DNA from: Guillardia theta CCMP2712
Lineage: Eukaryota > Protista > Cryptophyta
Assembly (NCBI RefSeq): GCF_000315625.1
Contig: NW_005434505.1
Location: forward strand, 34,677 to 98,676
Length of the DNA: 64,000 bases
Reading direction: 5' to 3'
Each line of letters opens with the position of its first letter. Position 1 is the stretch's first letter. Both the position numbers and the translations under genes were made by a program. This document shows positions 3,171 to 11,372 of the stretch, piece after piece. The notes under the pieces were generated by a model. It searched no databases and was not told where the DNA came from. It saw only the letters and a program-made list of their open reading frames with translations.

Positions 3171-5375
3171 TCACTGGGACAGAGCAGGCGTCTTCGGCTG
3201 CTCTTTCTGGGGACTTGAGAGGAAGCCGAACTCGGGCAGCTGCCAGCCAAAGTCGAGCAAGGAGACCAAGTGAAAGTAAAAAGAGGCAAAGTGCCAACAG
3301 TGCANNNNNNNNNNNNNNNNNNNNNNNNNNNNNNNNNNNNNNNNNNNNNNNNNNNNNNNNNNNNNNNNNNNNNNNNNNNNNNNNNNNNNNNNNNNNNNNN
3401 NNNNNNNNNNNNNNNNNNNNNNNNNNNNNNNNNNNNNNNNNNNNNNNNNNNNNNNNNNNNNNNNNNNNNNNNNNNNNNNNNNNNNNNNNNNNNNNNNNNN
3501 NNNNNNNNNNNNNNNNNNNNNNNNNNNNNNNNNNNNNNNNNNNNNNNNNNNNNNNNNNNNNNNNNNNNNNNNNNNNNNNNNNNNNNNNNNNNNNNNNNNN
3601 NNNNNNNNNNNNNNNNNNNNNNNNNNNNNNNNNNNNNNNNNNNNNNNNNNNNNNNNNNNNNNNNNNNNNNNNNNNNNNNNNNNNNNNNNNNNNNNNNNNN
3701 NNNNNNNNNNNNNNNNNNNNNNNNNNNNNNNNNNNNNNNNNNNNNNNNNNNNNNNNNNNNNNNNNNNNNNNNNNNNNNNNNNNNNNNNNNNNNNNNNNNN
3801 NNNNNNNNNNNNNNNNNNNNNNNNNNNNNNNNNNNNNNNNNNNNNCGCTACTGCAAGAGCAATGATGGTCATCGCAGCGCAACTAGCACAGCAAGAACAA
3901 CAAGAGGTAGAAGAAGCGGCTCGGTGAGCATCATAGACGTACTCCGTCCCCCAACCAGGAGCAGGAGGAGGAGGAGGAGGAGGAGGAGGAGGAGGCGATG
4001 AAGGCTCCTCCAGCGAATGTTCACAGCGCCCCTCCGAGAAAGAACGACTTGCCTTGCCCTGAAACCGATTGTTCTGCCACATCCCCTCGTACTTGCTGCC
4101 ATCTTGCATCGACAGGGTCCCATATCCTGCTCCACCACTCACAAGCCTGTAAGAACGGCCCACTACCCTCTCACCGTTCTTCACTCCCCGCTCAAACTCT
4201 CCCTGATACCGCGTCCCGTGGATCGAGCAGCGCTTCTGCTTCACTCGTCATGCCTCATGCACCGCAAACTTCCCCTGCTACCGCTGAAGGCGAGCCTCTC
4301 GCACTTGCTGCAGCAGTCTGTCAGCTTTCATCTGCCCCAGCTCTCGCTCCTGACCTTGAAAAGAGTCTACGCTCAAGATCCCTCTCTCCCTGCCGGGGGT
4401 TTGACACCTCATGTCCTTGCAAGAAGCCTTCAGAACAAGTTTCTTCATCCCTCCCCCAACCTCGATCGCATCGTTCCACATGTAACTCCCTTGCCCGTGC
4501 ATCAGGTCGTTTTCCCACTGCCCCTCGTAAACGTCTCCATTCTTCCATATGCAGATCCCCTATGGCACCGTCACCCTCCTCCTCCTCCTCCTCCCTCCTC
4601 CTCCTCCTCCTCCTCCTCCTCCCGCCAGCATCCCAACTTGGTTGTCTACCTGCCCGTGTGCCTTCCCATCGATCACTTCACCCTGATACTGCGCGTCGTC
4701 CATGCGAACGATCTGAACACGATAGCTCACAATCCTGGCACAGCAGAAGCGAACACTCACATTCTCCCTAGACATGCGGCCAGGAAGAGAGCTCTGAGGC
4801 TACAAACAGTCAGAGCTACTCACACAGTGGTGTCTTACTCGGCTCGTTTCCTTGCTCGAACTAGAGTTCGGTTGGAGCTCCGTCGTCTTGCCATAGCTCA
4901 CTCTGCTGTGAGGCCAGCACAGCTTCAGGTATGTGGCACAAGCTCAAGCTCAGTCATCGTGTTCACCTCGATCTGTTGGAGCCCTTGCGTCCGTTCACTT
5001 TCTTCCATTCACTTTGGTGTTAACTGACGTCCTCGAGATAGCGATCAAGAATACCTGCGTGCTCCGAGCACGAGTCAGCTCTGTCGATGCCATGGCCGAA
5101 GCTTCGTTCGCTGCTTTCTGTATCGATTGAATCTAGCGCAGGCTATCAGGAAACAGGCAACAGATCACGGGAAAGACGCGAGAACCATCGGTCCCTAATC
5201 GGTACCGACGAAGAATCATGGGACACGCTGATACTGGAGCTGCTGCTGAGAACCTCCGACTAACTTGTTGCAGACTTGCTCTCCTCGTCCATCTTCTCCT
5301 CCTCCTCCTCTAGCCTTCACTCTCCTCAGCCGCCTCCCTGCGCTCCTCGACATTCCCACCTTCTGTCGCCCCTGC
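3171..5375 (-). CDS. MORN-repeat protein (multi-exon, spans an N gap; ends approximate)
   Basis: Exons encode YQGEVIDGKAHGQ, GTYTWKNGDVYEGQWENDLMHGQGSYMW, RYQGEFERGVKNG and GYGTLSMQDGSKYEGMWQNNRFQG, matching the MORN consensus YxGxWxxGxxHGxG. Confidence 0.8.
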
Positions 5376-5599
5376 ATCTCACCGACTCGATGGTCGCCCT
5401 GGTCAATCTTCAAGTACTCTTGGGGTGGGGTCATTACTTGAGCATGAGTGTTTAGACCGGGTAATCTGAGTGACTTTTACGATATTTGGATAAGGTAGGG
5501 TGGTAAGCAGGAGGGGTCATACCTGCGGTTCAGGCCAGAACTGACCGAGCCCCTCATACAGCCCCCAGTTCCCCAAGTCAGCCGTCAAAAGCATCAAAA

Positions 5600-8500
5600 T
5601 AGATACAGTTTGACTAGCTGTCTTCGATAAGGCGTGCAAGGTACTGAAACCATGCATGTTTCGCGATAAATGTATCTATGAACTGCTCGGCAACGCATTT
5701 TATCCAAAGACATTCATGTTCACCTTCATGTGCATCATCTACACACATTCCACCTTCAACACACATTCCACCTTCAAGGCTTTGGATTGAACTTATATTT
5801 GGATTGAACTTATATTTTCATCTAGACTTCCCTATTTCTTCACTCCTATCTCTCTCCTCTCTAGTGCATATGATCATGATGTTCCAATCCCTCCTCCTAC
5901 CATTTGCTTCTGTTACTCTACTCCCCCCTCCCCCCCCCTCCCCCTCTCCCATGCCTCATCCCTTACATTGTCCCACTCTAACCATCCCTCATTCATTTTC
6001 TTTCCCTCCTGTGATAGGTCTCAACTCTCTCACTCTCCCCTCCTTCCTCGGCATTCATGATGGTTTCTTCCGAGCCTTTCCTCCCACTCTCCACAGGTTC
6101 TGCTTGCGACTATCAGTCTTGGTTGGTCTGCGCTCTCTGGCAAGCATCCATTTACCCCAACCTATCTTGTCCGCGTCTCTCTTGTCATCTTTATTCATAG
6201 CAAGCTTTCAGTTCCACTCAGTTCTCTGGCAAGTTTCTCATTAACATCACTGCATAGCTCCCGGCTGAGCTGTCAGTCACAGCGGGTTCATCAGGCTGCG
6301 ACTCCTCACCGGGGCCACCTGTCACATCATCTGCTGATGCGTCTGCAACAATCTGTTCAGACGTTGGTGCAACGCCTTGACTGCGATTGTTTCTCCATAC
6401 AATTCCCAGATTCTTGTAGTAAGTAATGTACGAATATGAACAGAACTGTTTCCGCGTGCCAAGGTCCACCCATGCGTCTTTCCCATAAACTGTCTCAACC
6501 ACTTGACGAAATCCTGTACTGTAACATTGCATCAGGTTCTGCGGCACAATCTCTTCTCCTTGTCCCAGTACCCCCCGTTCCCGGCAAATCCTTTCCACTT
6601 CATTCATGACCACCCTCGCTTTGTTGATGTTCCTCCTTGTGTTGTAGTCTGTGATGTCATCCCAGTATTGTTGAAGCAGAAGGTATTTCAATGGCCGGAT
6701 CCTCCGCACTTGACCTTTGTCGTCAATTATGTCCTGTCCAATATTCCACCACATGAACATGCTCCTCGTCGGCACCCGCAATGGGAAGGTAAAGTTGCTT
6801 GGAACCATGTGCTTACCCTGTCCATCCATCTCCCCTTCCCAGTCGAAATCGTCTCCCCCTACCTCCAATCCGCTGCTCGCACGTAGCACTGCCTGCCCAC
6901 TGCCAATGGATTGGTTCGGGTTCACTTCTTGCTCACCTCCATGTCCATCGGCTGGAGAATCCAGCCTCTCAGGCTCCATCATGTCCCTCGAATCATTGTG
7001 GGCGGCCACTCGGTCACCTTGTATCGCGGGGATGTTTGATGTGCCCAGAATTTTCATCAACTCTGCCCTTATCAACTCTTTGATACTCTCCGTTTGCTTC
7101 TGAATCTGCGCCTCTACCACGTTCTTGACGATACCTTCGATTCCTGCCATCACCTGGCCCAATACACCACCACTGCCCATACCTGCATCTGTCTCAATTC
7201 CCCGCATCCTCGGTCTGTTCGTGGCACTACACTGTCCACTGCATGTTGTACCACTGTTGCTGTTTGACAAGAATAGTTCCTGTGCCTGCCCTGCCACCGT
7301 ATCATCCCTTTCTGTACTTCGAACAACAGTGAATGGAAGTGCTGAACCGGTGAAATGTGCCCTCATCTCCTGCCTGATTTCTCCCAATTCCCTCAAGATG
7401 TCAGTCTTGGACGGGGTTCCACTGGCGGTCATCCCACATTCTGTACATCTGTGCACGGGTACGACAACCTCTTTTCGAAGCAACATGAGTCTTCTTATCG
7501 TGTCCGCACCGAAAATACCAAACATAGGCATCCCCCATATGAAATGATCATTGTCAGGATACCATCCTTGTAAGGTAGGGAGATGATACAGAATGCTCGC
7601 AAGGAAGAATTCGGTACATTTCTTAAAACCGTTCGGAAATTGCTCGTATCCATCGATGAAACGCTCCCAGCCTATCTGTTTAACCTGTCTCAACCCTTCC
7701 TGTGTGAAATGCGGAGGTAAAACCCCAAAATTGGCCGTGGTGCTATCGTTCCCTGCCAGTATTCTTCCCGCGAACTGATCTCCTCCCGTCCCACCAAGAA
7801 TGTATCGATCCTGTGTATCTCCTAAACATAATTCACTCAGTATGATGACGTGAAGTCCAACTCCCTATATGTCATACCTATCTTCCAGTTGGCCCTTATG
7901 TACACTGTTGGTGCTCCTGAACATGTTAAGATCAGCTGCCATTCCAGATTGATAAAACATCATACCTGGGCCATCCAGCATCCCTAGAAGGTGGGAAATA
8001 CTACCCTTTCTTAGCGATTGCGTGCCAGGAATTCCAAAGTTGTCAGGTTGTTCCTCGCGTAAAACCCTTTTCAAAAGCTGTTGAAATCGATGTTTTTGGT
8101 CCCTCCCAATCAACAATTTGCTGCCTTGCTCTGGCATGCAAATTCCTCTGCATGCGAAGGTGTAAAGCCCAAGAATGAGGATCGGGCAAATTTCAGGGCT
8201 GTGCGGAGCAGCGAAAACATGTTTCACACGAGTGCTATTCATATCCGTGCCTATGCCTGCTTGGTCCGTTCTAGTCGGAAGCAACACTACTTTCATAGCG
8301 TCTTCTTCCCACGACAGGTGTTCCAAACGAAGGATGTCCAGTGACACACTCCGACACACCAGGTTCCACATAAGGTTGGTGCATAGCCAACCGAAAATCC
8401 ATGAGTCCCCGGGTTCTGTGCTCCCCCTGCGAGGTTTGATCTGTCTCACAAAGTTGCACAGCATTCGATACTGCTGCATGTTGATGACTGTTCGACCTTC

Positions 8501-9850
8501 TTCCATGGACATTATCCCTTTGCTCTTCTTTTGTGCGACCACCTCCTTGTGTGACTGCATAATGTCCTCCAGTTCAAGGTCCAATGAAACATCTTTTGGT
8601 ATCCCCGTCGCTGTGAACGGTATCTTCCTTCGCTTGTACAGATATTTCAAAGCACTTTTGTACCCTCGGATGGTGGACATCGCAATGGTTGCTTTCTCTG
8701 ATGCTTTTGTGGAAGCAGATCCTTCACCATTCTCCGCAACGTCATCTTCGTCTTGTCCATCCCCTTCGCCGATGTCTTGGCTGTTGTGCATAGACGATGA
8801 CGCGGCTTCTTCCGACGCTGTTGATGCGGTGCTATGATGGTTACCAGTTTGACCTCGTGGTCTCTTCCTTGCTCGGGCCAATTGGTCATTTCCAGACAAA
8901 TATCGGAAAAAAGCGAGAAGTGGTTCATATGGAAGTGGTACCTTCAAATCATCCAAAGCTTCAGTCAAAGCGCAATGATAAGCTGTAAAGGATTTGAAGA
9001 AAAGGATCATGGCGAATATCCGATATGCATAGGTTTTCTGCGTGCTGATGTTGACTCCGTGCGATTCTAAGTTCCTGAATGCTTGCACGTTGCTGTCACT
9101 GTTCGTTGCCATCGGTGTGTTGGGATCATTGAAAACGGACAGTATGTCAGACTCGTCATCTTCACGCATCCGTTTACGTGGCCTGCCAACCACCCCAAGC
9201 CTCTTGCCTTTCTGACATGTTCCGCAATAGTCCCCTCGATCGCTATTAGCACGTTGGAAGGCGCATAAGATATGGAATTTTTTTTGGCAACCTCGGCATA
9301 CCTTCAACTGTGCATCATCTCTTTCCTGCAACTGACAATCAGGTCCAAATAAGCATGTATTGCCATCTTCAGTCGCCATGTCTTCCTATCTTGTTGCTGC
9401 GTGCTTTCCGTTCCGCTGGTATATTGCGATGTTTTGCCCCAATCCTGAAACATGAATAGGTAAGTCTGGTGTAACATTGAAAGAAATGCTTTGCAAACAG
9501 CAAGAAATGAGTGCATACCGGATGATGAAGGATGAAATCAGTTCGAAGGCGATAATGGTATGCTTGTGATTGTGATGGTACTTTCAAAAGGTTACCCTCA
9601 TCCTCTATCGACTTGTTTTTCTTGGTTTTGAATTCCCTTGTAGGACCGGTCCTATTCATAGTTTTAACCCCCCCCCCCCCCCCCTCCCCCCATCTGGACC
9701 CCTCTTTGTTTTAGGAGCCCTTTTTTCAAATTTTACCCAAAAAAAGAATCCTAAGCTTTTTTGGGGAGCCTGGGATTTTGTATTCCACACTCGACGGTCA
9801 CACGCCTTGATAGACTCGATACGGAGTCCGTGGGCATTCCAGTCAAAACC
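5600..9850 (-). mobile_element. Crypton-like DNA transposon (boundaries approximate)
   Basis: Tyrosine recombinase gene with no RT or integrase, in a block compositionally distinct from host genes. Weak inverted words AAGGCGTG (5629) and CACGCCTT (9801) lie near the presumed ends. Confidence 0.7.
6218..9379 (-). CDS. Crypton-type tyrosine recombinase, ~1018 aa, with N-terminal PHD finger and C-terminal GCR1_C-like region
   Basis: Exons 9379-7966, 7916-7878 and 7821-6218 join in frame via GT-AG introns of 49 and 56 nt. Motifs: MWNLVCRS (catalytic R), TRTDQAG, KHVFAAPHSPEICPILILG, GTQSLRKG, YIRANWKIGDTQDRY (W, catalytic Y), GGDQFAGRILAG, FGVLPPHF and VPSNFTFP..MFMWWNIG..IRPLKYL. Confidence 0.88.
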
Positions 9851-10061: not shown

Positions 10062-10493
10062 TTGGAGCATCTCGTACAACAGATCGTCTCCCTCTTGAAA
10101 AGCATGACGACTGGACACTCTTCTTCGTCTCCCGCCGCTTGCCTTGCTGTCAAGATCGTTCCCCGCAAGCGCAAGTTCGAGTCCCGCAACCGCCGCCCCC
10201 CCACTCTCGACTCCGCCGACGCCGTCCGCGCCCTCATGCACCTCAGCCAGCGGGAGGCAGCGGAGCAGCTCGACATCTCCCTCACGGCGCTCAAGAGCGC
10301 GTGCAAGAAGATGGGGATAACGGGCTGGCCGTACACGCGCAAGGAGAAGCTGGCAGCCGCCAAGGAGCAGCAGGCGGAGAAGGAGAGCGCGTCATTGATG
10401 GAGGAGGAGGAAGAGAGGGAGAGTCTGACGAGGATATTCCGGACATGGCGGACGATGGAGATGCTGGAGGAGGTGATAGGGCTGATTGAGTAG
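10062..10493 (+). CDS. RWP-RK domain transcription factor, copy 1
   Basis: KIVPRKRK...ADAVRALMHLSQREAAEQLDISLTALKSACKKMGITGWPYTRK matches the RWP-RK pattern (LxxxEAAxxLGxxxTxLKxxCRxxGIxRWPxRK). Confidence 0.85.
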   Translation: MEHLVQQIVSLLKSMTTGHSSSSPAACLAVKIVPRKRKFESRNRRPPTLDSADAVRALMHLSQREAAEQLDISLTALKSACKKMGITGWPYTRKEKLAAAKEQQAEKESASLMEEEEERESLTRIFRTWRTMEMLEEVIGLIE

Positions 10494-11001
10494 CAGAGGG
10501 AGTACCTTACAAAAGGGGCCATCTACCAAAGGTGTCTCTGCGCTGAGAGGTGCCCTTTTTTTTTGCTGGGTGTAGTTGAGATTATACCACTTGTTATTCA
10601 TAAAGCTTTAGTGTCTTTTGAACTGATTGTTGAACATTCTCTGCACACTGTGTAAGTTTCAACACGACCAACGAAGCTAGGGAGGTTCCGAATCGCTGAA
10701 CGCAACCACGTGATAAGCATCCTAACATTGCTGGAGCAGAAATGATGAAGTCTGTTGTTGTTCATCATTTCCTCGGACATTCCAAACAGAGTCCTTCTTT
10801 CGCCTACTTTTCTTCTTTCGATTCATTGATAAATATACAGCTTGTTCCCTACAGCTGCATGATTGTCTTTGCATCAGGGGAACGTTACAAAGGTGTCGCA
10901 AATGAAGACGACGCAGCAGCTGCTGCTTTTGCATCTGCAACCACAACAGATGCAGCAACGGCAGGATTATTGTGTACAGGAGGAGGAGCAGCAGCAGTAT
11001 T

Positions 11002-11097
11002 ATGAGCAGCAGCAGGCAGCAGCATTATGAGCAGGAGCATTATGAGCAGGAGCAGGAGCAGGAGCAGCATTATGAGCAGGAGCAGAAGCAGCATGAT

Positions 11098-11193
<96 letters not shown>
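11002..11193. repeat. (GAGCAG)n microsatellite with CATTAT variants
   Basis: Seen directly, in the spacer between the inverted RWP-RK copies. Confidence 0.95.
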
Positions 11194-11372
11194 TGAATGG
11201 AGCTTCAATATTGTTGAATCGTTACTAAATCCTCTTCTCCCTCCCACTAACCCCCATCAGAAGCAGAGCAAGAAACCTTGCATTCCATAAAGTTTGTAAT
11301 ACAAAAATAAATCGCGAGTGGAGTCTAATCACAACAGTTTCATGTCTCGCCTTTCTTGTATCCCTCCCTCTG

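What the first reader, a model, noticed from the sequence alone, without database searches (positions are those of the whole stretch)
6218..9379. Intact spliced Crypton-type recombinase with an N-terminal PHD finger
Seen: the two long ORFs are one ~1018-aa gene once introns 7965-7917 and 7877-7822 are removed, and the 39-nt micro-exon supplies the conserved W (IRANW). The N-terminus CLFGPDC..CRGC..HILC..CGTC is a C4-H-C3 pattern. Established: Cryptons are tyrosine-recombinase DNA transposons described in fungi, animals and stramenopiles, and PHD fingers read histone H3 tails. Inference: a chromatin-targeted site-specific recombinase, possibly a little-described lineage in this host group.
Basis: partly seen in the sequence, partly recalled or inferred. 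Interest (0 to 1): 0.75.

Follow-up and report, generated by a model that had tools for sequence, protein, structure and literature searches.

The report
Crypton jumping gene with PHD-like finger
This is one copy of a multi-copy "Crypton" jumping gene in the alga Guillardia theta whose cut-and-rejoin enzyme carries an extra zinc finger resembling chromatin-reading PHD fingers; the finger is a lineage-specific add-on not found described for Cryptons, but this copy is probably crippled.

Summary
On the minus strand, two long ORFs are joined by two short GT..AG introns (7965-7917, 7877-7822) and a 39-nt micro-exon into a 1018-codon frame. Both introns are conserved in position in paralogs down to 45% identity. 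Transcripts of one paralog are spliced exactly there.

A predicted structure matches Cre, XerH, lambda Int and Flp, so the protein is a tyrosine recombinase. The gene fills a ~4.15-kb repeat unit. The genome (Guillardia theta CCMP2712) holds at least 77 related stretches. A sister subfamily has 4-bp direct terminal repeats (ATAC) and internally deleted derivatives. This is a Crypton-type transposon, not a host gene.

The N-terminal C4HC3 finger is real and conserved in four subfamilies and in Hanusia phi. Every method ranks PHD fingers first, but none significantly: "PHD-like", with histone reading untested. The finger-bearing proteins form one clade inside a very large finger-less family (8054 cluster representatives, no Pfam match).

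"Intact" is too strong. This copy alone has Arg for the catalytic Lys and Gln for the active-site His, and lacks the sister type's 3' terminal ~220 bp.

The scan noted the same architecture elsewhere in this genome.

The parts
5632..9777 (-). Repeat unit of this Crypton copy (~4.15 kb). The 5' end, upstream of the gene, lies near 9771-9777. The 3' boundary near 5632 is where homology to the sister copies stops.
   Evidence: blastn and genome DNA search: 87-90% identity to G000:C16:250329-254725 and to C276 over window 5629-9568 and 9709-9765. End alignments are A1 and A2. Window 4800-5628 is unique in the genome.
7966..9379 (-). Exon 1: start codon at 9379, 471 full codons plus the first base of a split Gly codon. 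It encodes the finger, a SAM-like core-binding domain, an acidic low-complexity insert and most of the catalytic domain.
   Evidence: ORF. AF2 model with mean pLDDT 83.2, pTM 0.74; residues 177-218 are disordered. Phage_int_SAM_4 is sub-threshold in 7 of 15 family members, best E 7.9e-4.
9215..9355 (-). N-terminal cross-brace zinc finger, C4HC3 (C9, C15, C28, C31, H36, C39, C52, C55): PHD-like.
   Evidence: Regex and alignment show that 7 ligand positions (C9, C15, C28, C31, H36, C39, C52) are invariant columns; the eighth is Cys or His, and in Hanusia P0003 and the C105-type MAFFT places it in gapped columns. This holds across four G. theta subfamilies and Hanusia phi P0003. pLDDT is 87-91 in the exon-1 model. 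PHD families rank first but sub-threshold.
8351..8353 (-). Arg343, the Arg-I of the catalytic set. Conserved.
   Evidence: R in 96 of 99 rows of alignment A7.
8270..8272 (-). Residue 370: Arg in this copy, where the family has the beta-hairpin catalytic Lys.
   Evidence: K in 95 of 99 rows; this copy is the only R. The residue lies in the loop between strands 361-364 and 386-389 of the model. Its equivalence to Cre K201 is inferred from position.
8018..8020 (-). Residue 454: Gln (CAA) in this copy, where the family has the His of the H-x-x-R box.
   Evidence: H in 95 of 99 rows, Q in 3. The sister copy C16 reads GTHSLRKG, the window GTQSLRKG.
8009..8011 (-). Arg457, the Arg-II (SLRKG). Conserved.
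   Evidence: R in 95 of 99 rows.
7917..7965 (-). Intron 1 (49 nt, GT..AG, phase 1).
   Evidence: Sequence. The position is conserved in six paralogs while the sequence is not. The homologous intron is removed in MMETSP transcripts P0024 and P0027.
7878..7916 (-). Micro-exon (39 nt) encoding APTVYIRANWKI. Trp at 7885-7887 is the His/Trp-III position.
   Evidence: Conserved in paralogs and in all distant homologs as (L/I)RA(G/N)W.
7822..7877 (-). Intron 2 (56 nt, GT..AG, phase 1).
6218..7821 (-). Exon 3, stop codon included. It holds the nucleophile Tyr in DRY at 7802-7804, the LPPHF motif and a long C-terminal extension.
   Evidence: The Y column is at least 90% conserved in A7.
6416..6847 (-). 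Conserved C-terminal domain of the family (W-x-G-x-x-H-x-V-P ... W-x-x-W ... R-I-x-P), function unknown.
   Evidence: Conserved from cryptophytes to stramenopile and metagenome homologs. No Pfam match. Atlas neighbours are oomycete proteins and a GCR1_C/NDC10_II cluster at 0.85-0.87, a lead only.

Best explanation
Window ~5632-9777 is one copy of a Crypton-type DNA transposon of Guillardia theta. Its single three-exon gene encodes a 1018-residue protein with these parts: an N-terminal cross-brace (PHD-like) zinc finger, a SAM-like core-binding domain, a Cre-like tyrosine-recombinase catalytic domain, and a family-specific C-terminal domain.

By analogy with Cryptons, active members are excised as circles. 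They re-insert by recombinase-catalysed exchange between a short sequence at the element's ends (ATAC in the sister subfamily) and a matching target.

The finger was added once, in the Guillardia/Hanusia lineage, to an otherwise finger-less and very widespread recombinase family. It most likely tethers the recombinase to chromatin or to DNA. That step is inferred, not shown.

This particular copy keeps an open, selectively constrained frame. However, it has Arg for the catalytic Lys, Gln for the active-site His, and no counterpart of the sister type's 3' terminus. It is therefore probably a weak or immobile copy rather than the active master.
For: Gene model:
- Intron positions and the micro-exon are conserved in six paralogs.
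- Paralog transcripts P0024 and P0027 are spliced at both sites; I checked this against locus L008.

Recombinase:
- The AF2 model has pLDDT 83.
- Foldseek top hits are Cre (E 4.8e-5, probability 1.0), XerH, lambda Int, Xer and Flp, plus the Crypton-related QRICH1 and Ndc10.
- The R, K, H-x-x-R, W and Y columns are at least 90-95% conserved in 99 sequences.

Transposon:
- 77 tblastn matches in the genome.
- 87-90% DNA identity to the C16 and C276 copies extends into non-coding flanks and to a shared 5' terminus.
- The sister type starts ATACAAGG... and ends ...GGGATAC.
- Internally deleted derivatives exist whose right-terminal ~67 bp are identical at C74, C601, C14 and C11; C66 is 97%.

Finger:
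- 7 ligand positions are invariant and the eighth is C or H, in four subfamilies and Hanusia.
- PHD ranks first in Pfam, PDB profile, Foldseek and Atlas searches.
- The finger-bearing rows form one clade (SH-aLRT 98) nested among finger-less relatives.
- None of the other ~200 family members fetched has the pattern.

Constraint: dN/dS is 0.28-0.32 against the C16 copy, with dS 0.17.

Crippling:
- K370R is unique among 99 rows; H454Q is shared with 2 others.
- In Cre, K201R has only weak in vivo and no measurable in vitro activity, while H289Q stays active (PMC2943603).
- The C16-type 3' terminal ~220 bp is absent from the window.
Against: - No Pfam, NCBI-style or PDB sequence match ties the protein to any recombinase family. 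The fold match rests on a predicted model with TM-scores of only 0.3-0.57.
- No transcript or gene model of this copy itself was found.
- Transposition, circles and empty sites were not observed.
- The termini of this copy are not defined to the base.
- All evidence for a PHD fold is below significance, and VIA ties PHD with FYVE, AN1, RING and the DNA-binding piggyBac finger.
- The excess of replacements on the window lineage is not statistically significant: 16N:10S against 5N:7S, Fisher p = 0.31.
Confidence: 0.8

Rival explanations
1. The finger is not a histone reader. Like the cross-brace cysteine-rich domain of piggyBac transposase, it binds DNA (the element's ends or the target), or it mediates multimerisation of the recombinase.
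For: VIA-align lists the piggyBac cross-brace finger (5lme, Z 2.3) within 1 Z unit of the best PHD, FYVE and AN1 rows. RING fingers such as listerin and APC11 also appear. The first ligand pair has an atypical C-x5-C spacing. Pfam PHD stays below its cut-off in all subfamilies. The sister subfamily inserts with a defined short sequence, ATAC, which needs DNA recognition.
Against: PHD families fill nearly all top ranks in Foldseek and all ten top named Atlas clusters. The core LKVC-x2-C-x4-H-x2-C resembles the PHD core (alignments to Hop1, UHRF1). The protein already has a SAM-like core-binding domain and a conserved C-terminal domain that could recognise DNA.
Confidence: 0.35
2. This copy is a domesticated host gene: a Crypton-derived chromatin or DNA-binding protein kept for a cellular function, no longer a transposon.
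For: The 1018-codon frame is open with dN/dS ~0.3. Two catalytic positions are substituted. The 3' flank is unique, without the sister type's terminus. An earlier scan note (s1-432775, not tested here) reports another Crypton-derived gene in this genome with a dead active site.
Against: Non-coding homology to the mobile C16 type runs on both sides of the gene, up to the shared 5' terminal sequence. Divergence is only dS 0.17 from a copy whose subfamily has identical termini at several loci. R, R, W and Y are kept, and Lys-to-Arg and His-to-Gln both occur in natural recombinases (PMC2943603). No transcript or gene model of this copy was found. Constraint of this size is usual between transposon lineages.
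Confidence: 0.08
3. The recombinase belongs not to a Crypton but to a fragment of a larger element, for example a polinton-like virus or another cargo-carrying element that uses a tyrosine recombinase.
For: Polinton-like viruses of cryptophytes often encode tyrosine recombinases (PMC12220804). The left side of the C16 and C276 copies is shared for more than 2 kb.
Against: Window-to-C16 homology is confined to ~4.15 kb, almost filled by this one gene. Deletion derivatives of 95-350 bp carry both termini. The neighbours in the window are unique sequence and an RWP-RK gene. Many metagenome homologs sit on 2.5-5 kb contigs as single genes.
Confidence: 0.04

Closest known systems
CryptonS elements of stramenopiles (Kojima & Jurka 2011, PMC3212892)
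   Same: A single-gene DNA transposon of 3-4.7 kb encoding a tyrosine recombinase. It has no GCR1_C or DUF3504 Pfam match and a conserved family-specific C-terminal region. It has short (4-7 bp) direct terminal repeats and non-autonomous deletion derivatives. Profile relatives include an oomycete (Lagenidium) protein and chrysophyte proteins.
   Different: The host is a cryptophyte, which is not in the published host lists I could search. It has an added N-terminal C4HC3 finger that was absent from every non-cryptophyte relative fetched. It has two conserved short introns with a micro-exon. The terminal repeat is ATAC rather than TATGG or CTGTAAG. Membership by phylogeny could not be tested because no Repbase sequences are available here.
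Cre / XerH / lambda Int tyrosine recombinases
   Same: The predicted two-domain fold and the catalytic set R..K..H-x-x-R..W..Y in the same order.
   Different: About 10% identity. The protein is three times longer, with an N-terminal finger, an acidic disordered insert and a ~500-residue C-terminal extension. In this copy Lys is replaced by Arg and His by Gln.
PHD fingers (Pfam PF00628), e.g. of MLL3, Pygo, KDM5B, UHRF1
   Same: A C4HC3 ligand order with PHD-like spacings after the first pair, a short beta-pair followed by a helix in the model, and an aromatic residue before the last pair in most subfamilies.
   Different: The first pair is C-x5-C. The score is below Pfam's cut-off. The last ligand is His in one subfamily. 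There is no evidence of histone binding.
Transposases carrying PHD or PHD-like fingers (Ginger1 and Mutator transposases, PMC2836005; piggyBac cysteine-rich domain, PDB 5lme)
   Same: A mobile-element enzyme fused to a cross-brace zinc finger.
   Different: Those are DDE transposases with the finger at the C-terminus. Here the enzyme is a tyrosine recombinase and the finger is N-terminal.

Membership tests
Crypton (tyrosine-recombinase DNA transposon) | Encodes a tyrosine recombinase (fold and catalytic R-K-H-R-H/W-Y) | tested here: met
   Foldseek: Cre, XerH, lambda Int, Flp at probability 0.99-1.0. Catalytic columns are at least 95% conserved in the family. In this copy K is R and H is Q; R, R, W and Y are kept.
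Crypton (tyrosine-recombinase DNA transposon) | No reverse transcriptase, no LTRs or TIRs; the recombinase is the only gene in a compact element | tested here: met
   The repeat unit is ~4.15 kb, of which the gene takes 3.16 kb. The end alignments show no LTR or long TIR. The short overlapping ORFs were not scanned one by one.
Crypton (tyrosine-recombinase DNA transposon) | Multi-copy and mobile, with non-autonomous derivatives possible | tested here: met
   77 protein-level matches. There are several subfamilies. Deletion derivatives have identical right termini at C74, C601, C14 and C11, with C66 at 97%. Actual movement was not observed.
Crypton (tyrosine-recombinase DNA transposon) | [quoted passage not shown] | tested here: inconclusive
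   The sister C16-type reads ATAC-AAGG ... GGG-ATAC in 5 of 6 independent right ends and 2 left ends. For the window copy the termini could not be fixed to the base, and no empty site is available.
CryptonS group | Clusters with Repbase CryptonS recombinases in a phylogeny | not testable with these tools
   No Repbase sequences are available. Indirect support only: oomycete and chrysophyte proteins are strong profile hits.
CryptonA / DUF3504 (PF12012) | Match to DUF3504 | tested here: not met
   No DUF3504 hit at E <= 1 for this protein or for the 24 family members scanned.
CryptonF | C-terminal GCR1_C DNA-binding domain (PF12550) | tested here: not met
   No GCR1_C hit at E <= 1. There is only a language-model lead of 0.85 to a GCR1_C/NDC10_II cluster.
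PHD finger (PF00628) | C4HC3 ligands in cross-brace order with PHD spacings | tested here: met
   C-x5-C-x12-C-x2-C-x4-H-x2-C-x12-C-x2-C, conserved in four subfamilies and Hanusia. The first spacing is atypical.
PHD finger (PF00628) | Score above Pfam's gathering cut-off | tested here: not met
   14.3 bits (window) and 16.9 bits (best paralog) against a cut-off of 24. Hanusia gives PHD_NSD at 13.3 bits against 23.9.
PHD finger (PF00628) | PHD fold | tested here: inconclusive
   The finger-only model has pLDDT 66; within the exon-1 model it is 87-91. Foldseek top ranks are mostly PHD, at E >= 0.26. VIA Z <= 2.9 is tied with FYVE, AN1 and RING.
PHD finger (PF00628) | Binds histone tails | not testable with these tools
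   This needs peptide arrays, ITC or NMR.

The most novel reading that the evidence does not exclude
A cryptophyte-specific Crypton clade has recruited a histone-reading PHD finger. Recombinase-mediated integration would then be steered by chromatin state, for example to promoter-proximal nucleosomes; this copy sits ~290 bp upstream of an RWP-RK gene. That would be a tyrosine-recombinase counterpart of the chromodomain targeting of chromoviral integrases.
Probability: 0.2. Interest if true: 0.7.

Novelty: new variant of a known kind. Interest (0 to 1): 0.45.

Why it matters
Cryptons are the least understood class of eukaryotic DNA transposons. Activity has been seen directly only in Chlamydomonas (PMC9977147).

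This report adds four things:
- A host group (cryptophytes) that the Crypton literature I could search does not cover.
- A recombinase family of at least 8000 sequence clusters that Pfam does not recognise at all.
- A clear case of a single, datable gain of a PHD-like finger by a tyrosine recombinase.
- A gene structure with a conserved 39-nt micro-exon carrying a catalytic residue.

If the finger reads chromatin, it would be a natural example of a site-specific recombinase coupled to a chromatin reader. That bears on how transposons choose targets, and on recombinase engineering.

If it does not, the finding is still a useful annotation. The G. theta gene models for this family are fragments of 177-212 residues.

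Tried and rejected
- **Sequence-only family assignment failed.** Pfam on both ORFs, on 15 family members and on 10 further members gave nothing significant. A family profile against PDB sequences gave only chance hits to radial spoke protein 9.
- **GCR1_C identity of the C-terminal domain.** It was suggested by the Atlas (0.85) but found no HMM support. I kept it only as a lead.
- **Neutral decay of this copy.** Pairwise dN/dS is 0.28-0.32. Lineage counts with C49 or C51 outgroups give omega ~0.35-0.45 on both lineages. The threefold excess of replacements in the conserved core of the window lineage is not significant (Fisher p = 0.31). So neither 'decaying pseudogene' nor 'fully constrained' can be claimed.
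- **Expression of this copy.** Word searches with exon 1 and exon 3 found no identical or near-identical model or transcript within the length limits. This says little about longer or shorter records.
I could not see whether P0001's contig is cDNA, so I used the MMETSP members of its cluster instead.
- **Kojima & Jurka's supplements** hold no CryptonS protein sequences, so no direct comparison was possible.
Full report
**Observation**

The window is G000:C169:34677-98676 of an 87-Mb, 669-contig assembly. Paralogous proteins are identical to GUITHDRAFT models of Guillardia theta CCMP2712, and one such model lies on a contig of 1,226,574 bases. That is exactly the length of G000:C7, so the genome is G. 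theta.

On the minus strand, ORFs 7865-9379 and 6218-7693 exist as described. I read the junction:
- Exon 1 ends at 7966 with one base of a Gly codon.
- 7965-7917 is a 49-nt GT..AG intron.
- 7916-7878 is a 39-nt exon encoding APTVYIRANWKI between two split Gly codons.
- 7877-7822 is a 56-nt GT..AG intron.
- 7821 onward continues in frame as DTQDRYILGG... into the second ORF.

The total is 471 + 1 + 12 + 1 + 533 = 1018 codons.

I did not build, search or fold a joined protein.

**Is the splice model real?**

Three independent lines say yes.
- In an alignment of the junction region from six paralogous loci (45-89% protein identity), the micro-exon and the flanking exon ends are conserved with mostly third-position changes. 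All GT and AG dinucleotides are invariant, and the intron interiors are unalignable (A3).
- Distant homologs from metagenomes and from Hanusia read contiguously through both junctions, e.g. ...GP-x4-(I/V)-x-(L/I)-RA-x-W-x-x-G-x5-Y....
- MMETSP transcriptome ORFs P0024 and P0027 (713 aa) belong to the paralog at G000:C103/C105. They contain LEGPG-VPTVYIRANWRI-GDTEDRYIV, which matches exons separated by GT..AG introns at the homologous positions of locus L008.

This is transcript evidence for a paralog, not for this copy.

**What the protein is**

Sequence libraries are blind to it. There is no significant Pfam hit for either ORF, for 15 aligned relatives or for 10 further relatives. Only Phage_int_SAM_4 appears, sub-threshold, in 7 of 15 members, and there is no hit to PDB sequences.

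A profile search of 1.84 billion representatives nevertheless found 8054 clusters at E <= 1e-3 and 1975 at E <= 1e-30. Named members include an oomycete (Lagenidium giganteum), chrysophytes (Pedospumella, Mallomonas) and a finger-less G. theta protein, GUITHDRAFT_113076.

With a 99-sequence alignment, AlphaFold2 gave a confident model of exon 1 (mean pLDDT 83.2, pTM 0.74). Foldseek against the PDB returned these matches:
- Cre recombinase at the top (E 4.8e-5, probability 1.00).
- Then XerH, lambda integrase, archaeal Xer and Flp.
- Also QRICH1 and Ndc10, both known relatives of Crypton recombinases.

The family-invariant columns are those expected of a tyrosine recombinase:
- Arg343.
- A Lys in the loop between two strands (position 370).
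- The H-S-x-R-K-G box (454-459).
- The Trp of the micro-exon.
- The Tyr of DRY in exon 3.

**Why it is a transposon**

The exon-1 protein has 77 matches in the genome. At the DNA level the window copy is 87-90% identical to copies at C16 and C276 over window 5629-9568 and 9709-9765. That span takes in ~590 bp downstream and ~400 bp upstream of the gene. Outside it, the window sequence is unique.

C276 is a ~99% duplicate of the C16 locus, including 2.2 kb of flank, so it is not an independent copy.

The C16-type element is bounded by ATACAAGG... on one side and ...CTTGGGATAC on the other. This is a 4-bp direct terminal repeat, as in Cryptons.

There are also internally deleted derivatives: ~350 bp at C74, and ~95 bp at C14 and C11. 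Their right-terminal ~67 bp are identical at C74, C601, C14 and C11, and 97% at C66. That points to recent activity of this sister subfamily.

These features fit the published description of Cryptons, and of CryptonS in particular: a compact single-gene element, no TIRs or LTRs, short direct terminal repeats, deletion derivatives, no GCR1_C or DUF3504, and a conserved C-terminal region (PMC3212892). They also fit the integration model supported by the active Chlamydomonas Crypton (PMC9977147). Placement among Repbase groups could not be tested.

**The finger**

Residues 9-55 read C-x5-C-x12-C-x2-C-x4-H-x2-C-x12-C-x2-C.

Seven ligand positions are invariant in four G. theta subfamilies (window/C16, C49, C51/C59/C168/C22, C105/C103/C48/C7) and in a Hanusia phi transcript. 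The eighth position is Cys or His.

The finger lies in the same uninterrupted exon as the core-binding domain, so the fusion is not a gene-model artefact.

The evidence on what kind of finger it is:

| Method | Result |
|---|---|
| Pfam PHD | top hit, 14.3-16.9 bits against a cut-off of 24 |
| Finger profile against PDB sequences | Hop1, UHRF1, KDM5 A/B/D, CHD4 and WSTF PHD fingers, plus listerin RING, at E 0.2-5 |
| Foldseek with a finger-only model (pLDDT 66) | almost only PHD fingers, at E >= 0.26 |
| VIA-align against 48,161 chains | Z <= 2.9, with FYVE, AN1, PHD, RING and the DNA-binding piggyBac cross-brace finger tied |
| Protein atlas | only PHD clusters among the top named hits, score 0.83 |

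My conclusion is that this is a cross-brace, PHD-like zinc finger, at about 75% confidence. Histone reading is unproven, and DNA binding is a live alternative.

**Origin of the finger**

Among 213 family proteins fetched, only Hanusia P0003 carries the pattern; the G. theta copies were translated from loci.

I built a maximum-likelihood tree on the core-binding and catalytic columns, leaving out the finger's own columns. It used 99 rows, 321 columns, LG+G4 and SH-aLRT support, and no rows were removed. The eight finger-bearing rows plus the 5'-truncated transcript P0024 form one group with support 98. This group is nested among finger-less sequences. Its nearest neighbours are the finger-less G. 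theta GUITHDRAFT_113076, and then P0002 and P0097.

So the finger was gained once, before the Guillardia/Hanusia subfamilies diverged. The midpoint root was used only for drawing, so direction rests on the overwhelming majority of finger-less relatives.

**State of this copy**

Against the C16 copy, dN/dS is 0.28 (exon 1) and 0.32 (exon 3) at dS ~0.17. Most of the divergence therefore happened under purifying selection.

Yet the window copy is the only one of 99 sequences with Arg at the Lys370 column, and one of three with Gln at the His454 column. Its closest paralog has K and H.

In Cre, all K201 substitutions lack measurable in vitro activity, and K201R is expected to be about 100-fold down. 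H289Q remains active but accumulates covalent intermediate. Among natural recombinases, 3.8% have Arg at the Lys position and about 1% have Gln at the His position (PMC2943603).

The window lineage also has 16 replacements in the conserved core against 5 on the C16 lineage. With 10 against 7 synonymous changes, this is not significant.

Finally, the C16-type continues ~220 bp beyond the point where window homology stops, and that terminal segment is nowhere in the window.

I read the copy as an old, probably weak or immobile member with a still-open frame, not as 'intact'.

**Comparison and novelty**

It works like a Crypton and passes the tests that could be run. It is not a DUF3504 (CryptonA) or GCR1_C (CryptonF) type, and it most resembles CryptonS.

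Full-text searches found no paper linking Cryptons to Guillardia beyond a passing mention. None describes a PHD-bearing Crypton. PHD fingers are known on DDE transposases such as Ginger1 and Mutator (PMC2836005), so the principle is not new.

I rate it a new variant of a known kind, of moderate interest.

The scan has noted the same architecture on other DNA of this genome (s1-450818). It has also noted a putatively domesticated relative (s1-432775), which I did not test.

**Shown and inferred**

Shown:
- Gene structure.
- Recombinase fold (predicted).
- Multi-copy repeat with defined termini in the sister type.
- Conserved C4HC3 finger confined to one clade.
- Copy-specific catalytic substitutions.

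Inferred:
- Circle-mediated transposition.
- Equivalence of residue 370 to Cre K201.
- PHD fold.
- Any chromatin targeting.

Noticed in passing
window 10062-10493 (+): The ORF next to the element's 5' end has a significant RWP-RK domain (E 1.7e-11). The Crypton's 5' terminus (~9777) lies ~290 bp from it, head to head, so the insertion sits in a gene-proximal upstream region.
   Followed up: partly
window 9668-9695: A C-rich homopolymer-like tract (about 25 C in 28 bases) sits in the element's upstream non-coding part. It is absent from the C16 and C276 copies, which have unrelated sequence there.
   Followed up: no
window 10885-11247: A long triplet repeat encodes poly-Leu on one strand and (EQ)n on the other.
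   Followed up: no
L014 (G000:C276:1-6395) vs L018 (G000:C16:250306-256692): The C276 contig start duplicates the C16 locus at 98.6-99.96% identity, including 2.2 kb beyond the element, and then diverges at the element's right end. This is either an assembly redundancy or haplotype, or a recent segmental duplication bounded by the transposon.
   Followed up: partly
L020 (G000:C170:93200-94000): The 3'-terminal region of the C16-type element is tandemly duplicated (two ~170-280-bp units at ~99% identity) without the recombinase gene.
   Followed up: no
L019 (G000:C74:33300-34000), hypothetical circle junction: Joining the C16-type right and left ends through the shared ATAC gives an imperfect palindrome (GGCGCCCT ... 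AGGGCGC and AGAATC ... GATTCT arms). This could be the pair of inverted recombinase-binding sites around the crossover. It was computed only as a fold of the joined ends.
   Followed up: partly
protein family as a whole (P0002-P0213): A recombinase family with 8054 cluster representatives at E <= 1e-3, found in oomycetes, chrysophytes, cryptophytes and many metagenomes, has no Pfam model. G. theta's own gene models for it are fragments of 177-212 residues.
   Followed up: partly
P0091 (GUITHDRAFT_113076, G. theta; elsewhere in the genome): A finger-less 794-residue paralog, nearest outgroup of the finger-bearing clade, also has Gln at the active-site His column.
   Followed up: no
L017 (G000:C49:466000-475999): A 76%-identical copy has lost residues ~75-293 (the core-binding domain), has Gly in place of the micro-exon Trp and Lys in place of the box His. 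It is a clearly degraded relative.
   Followed up: partly
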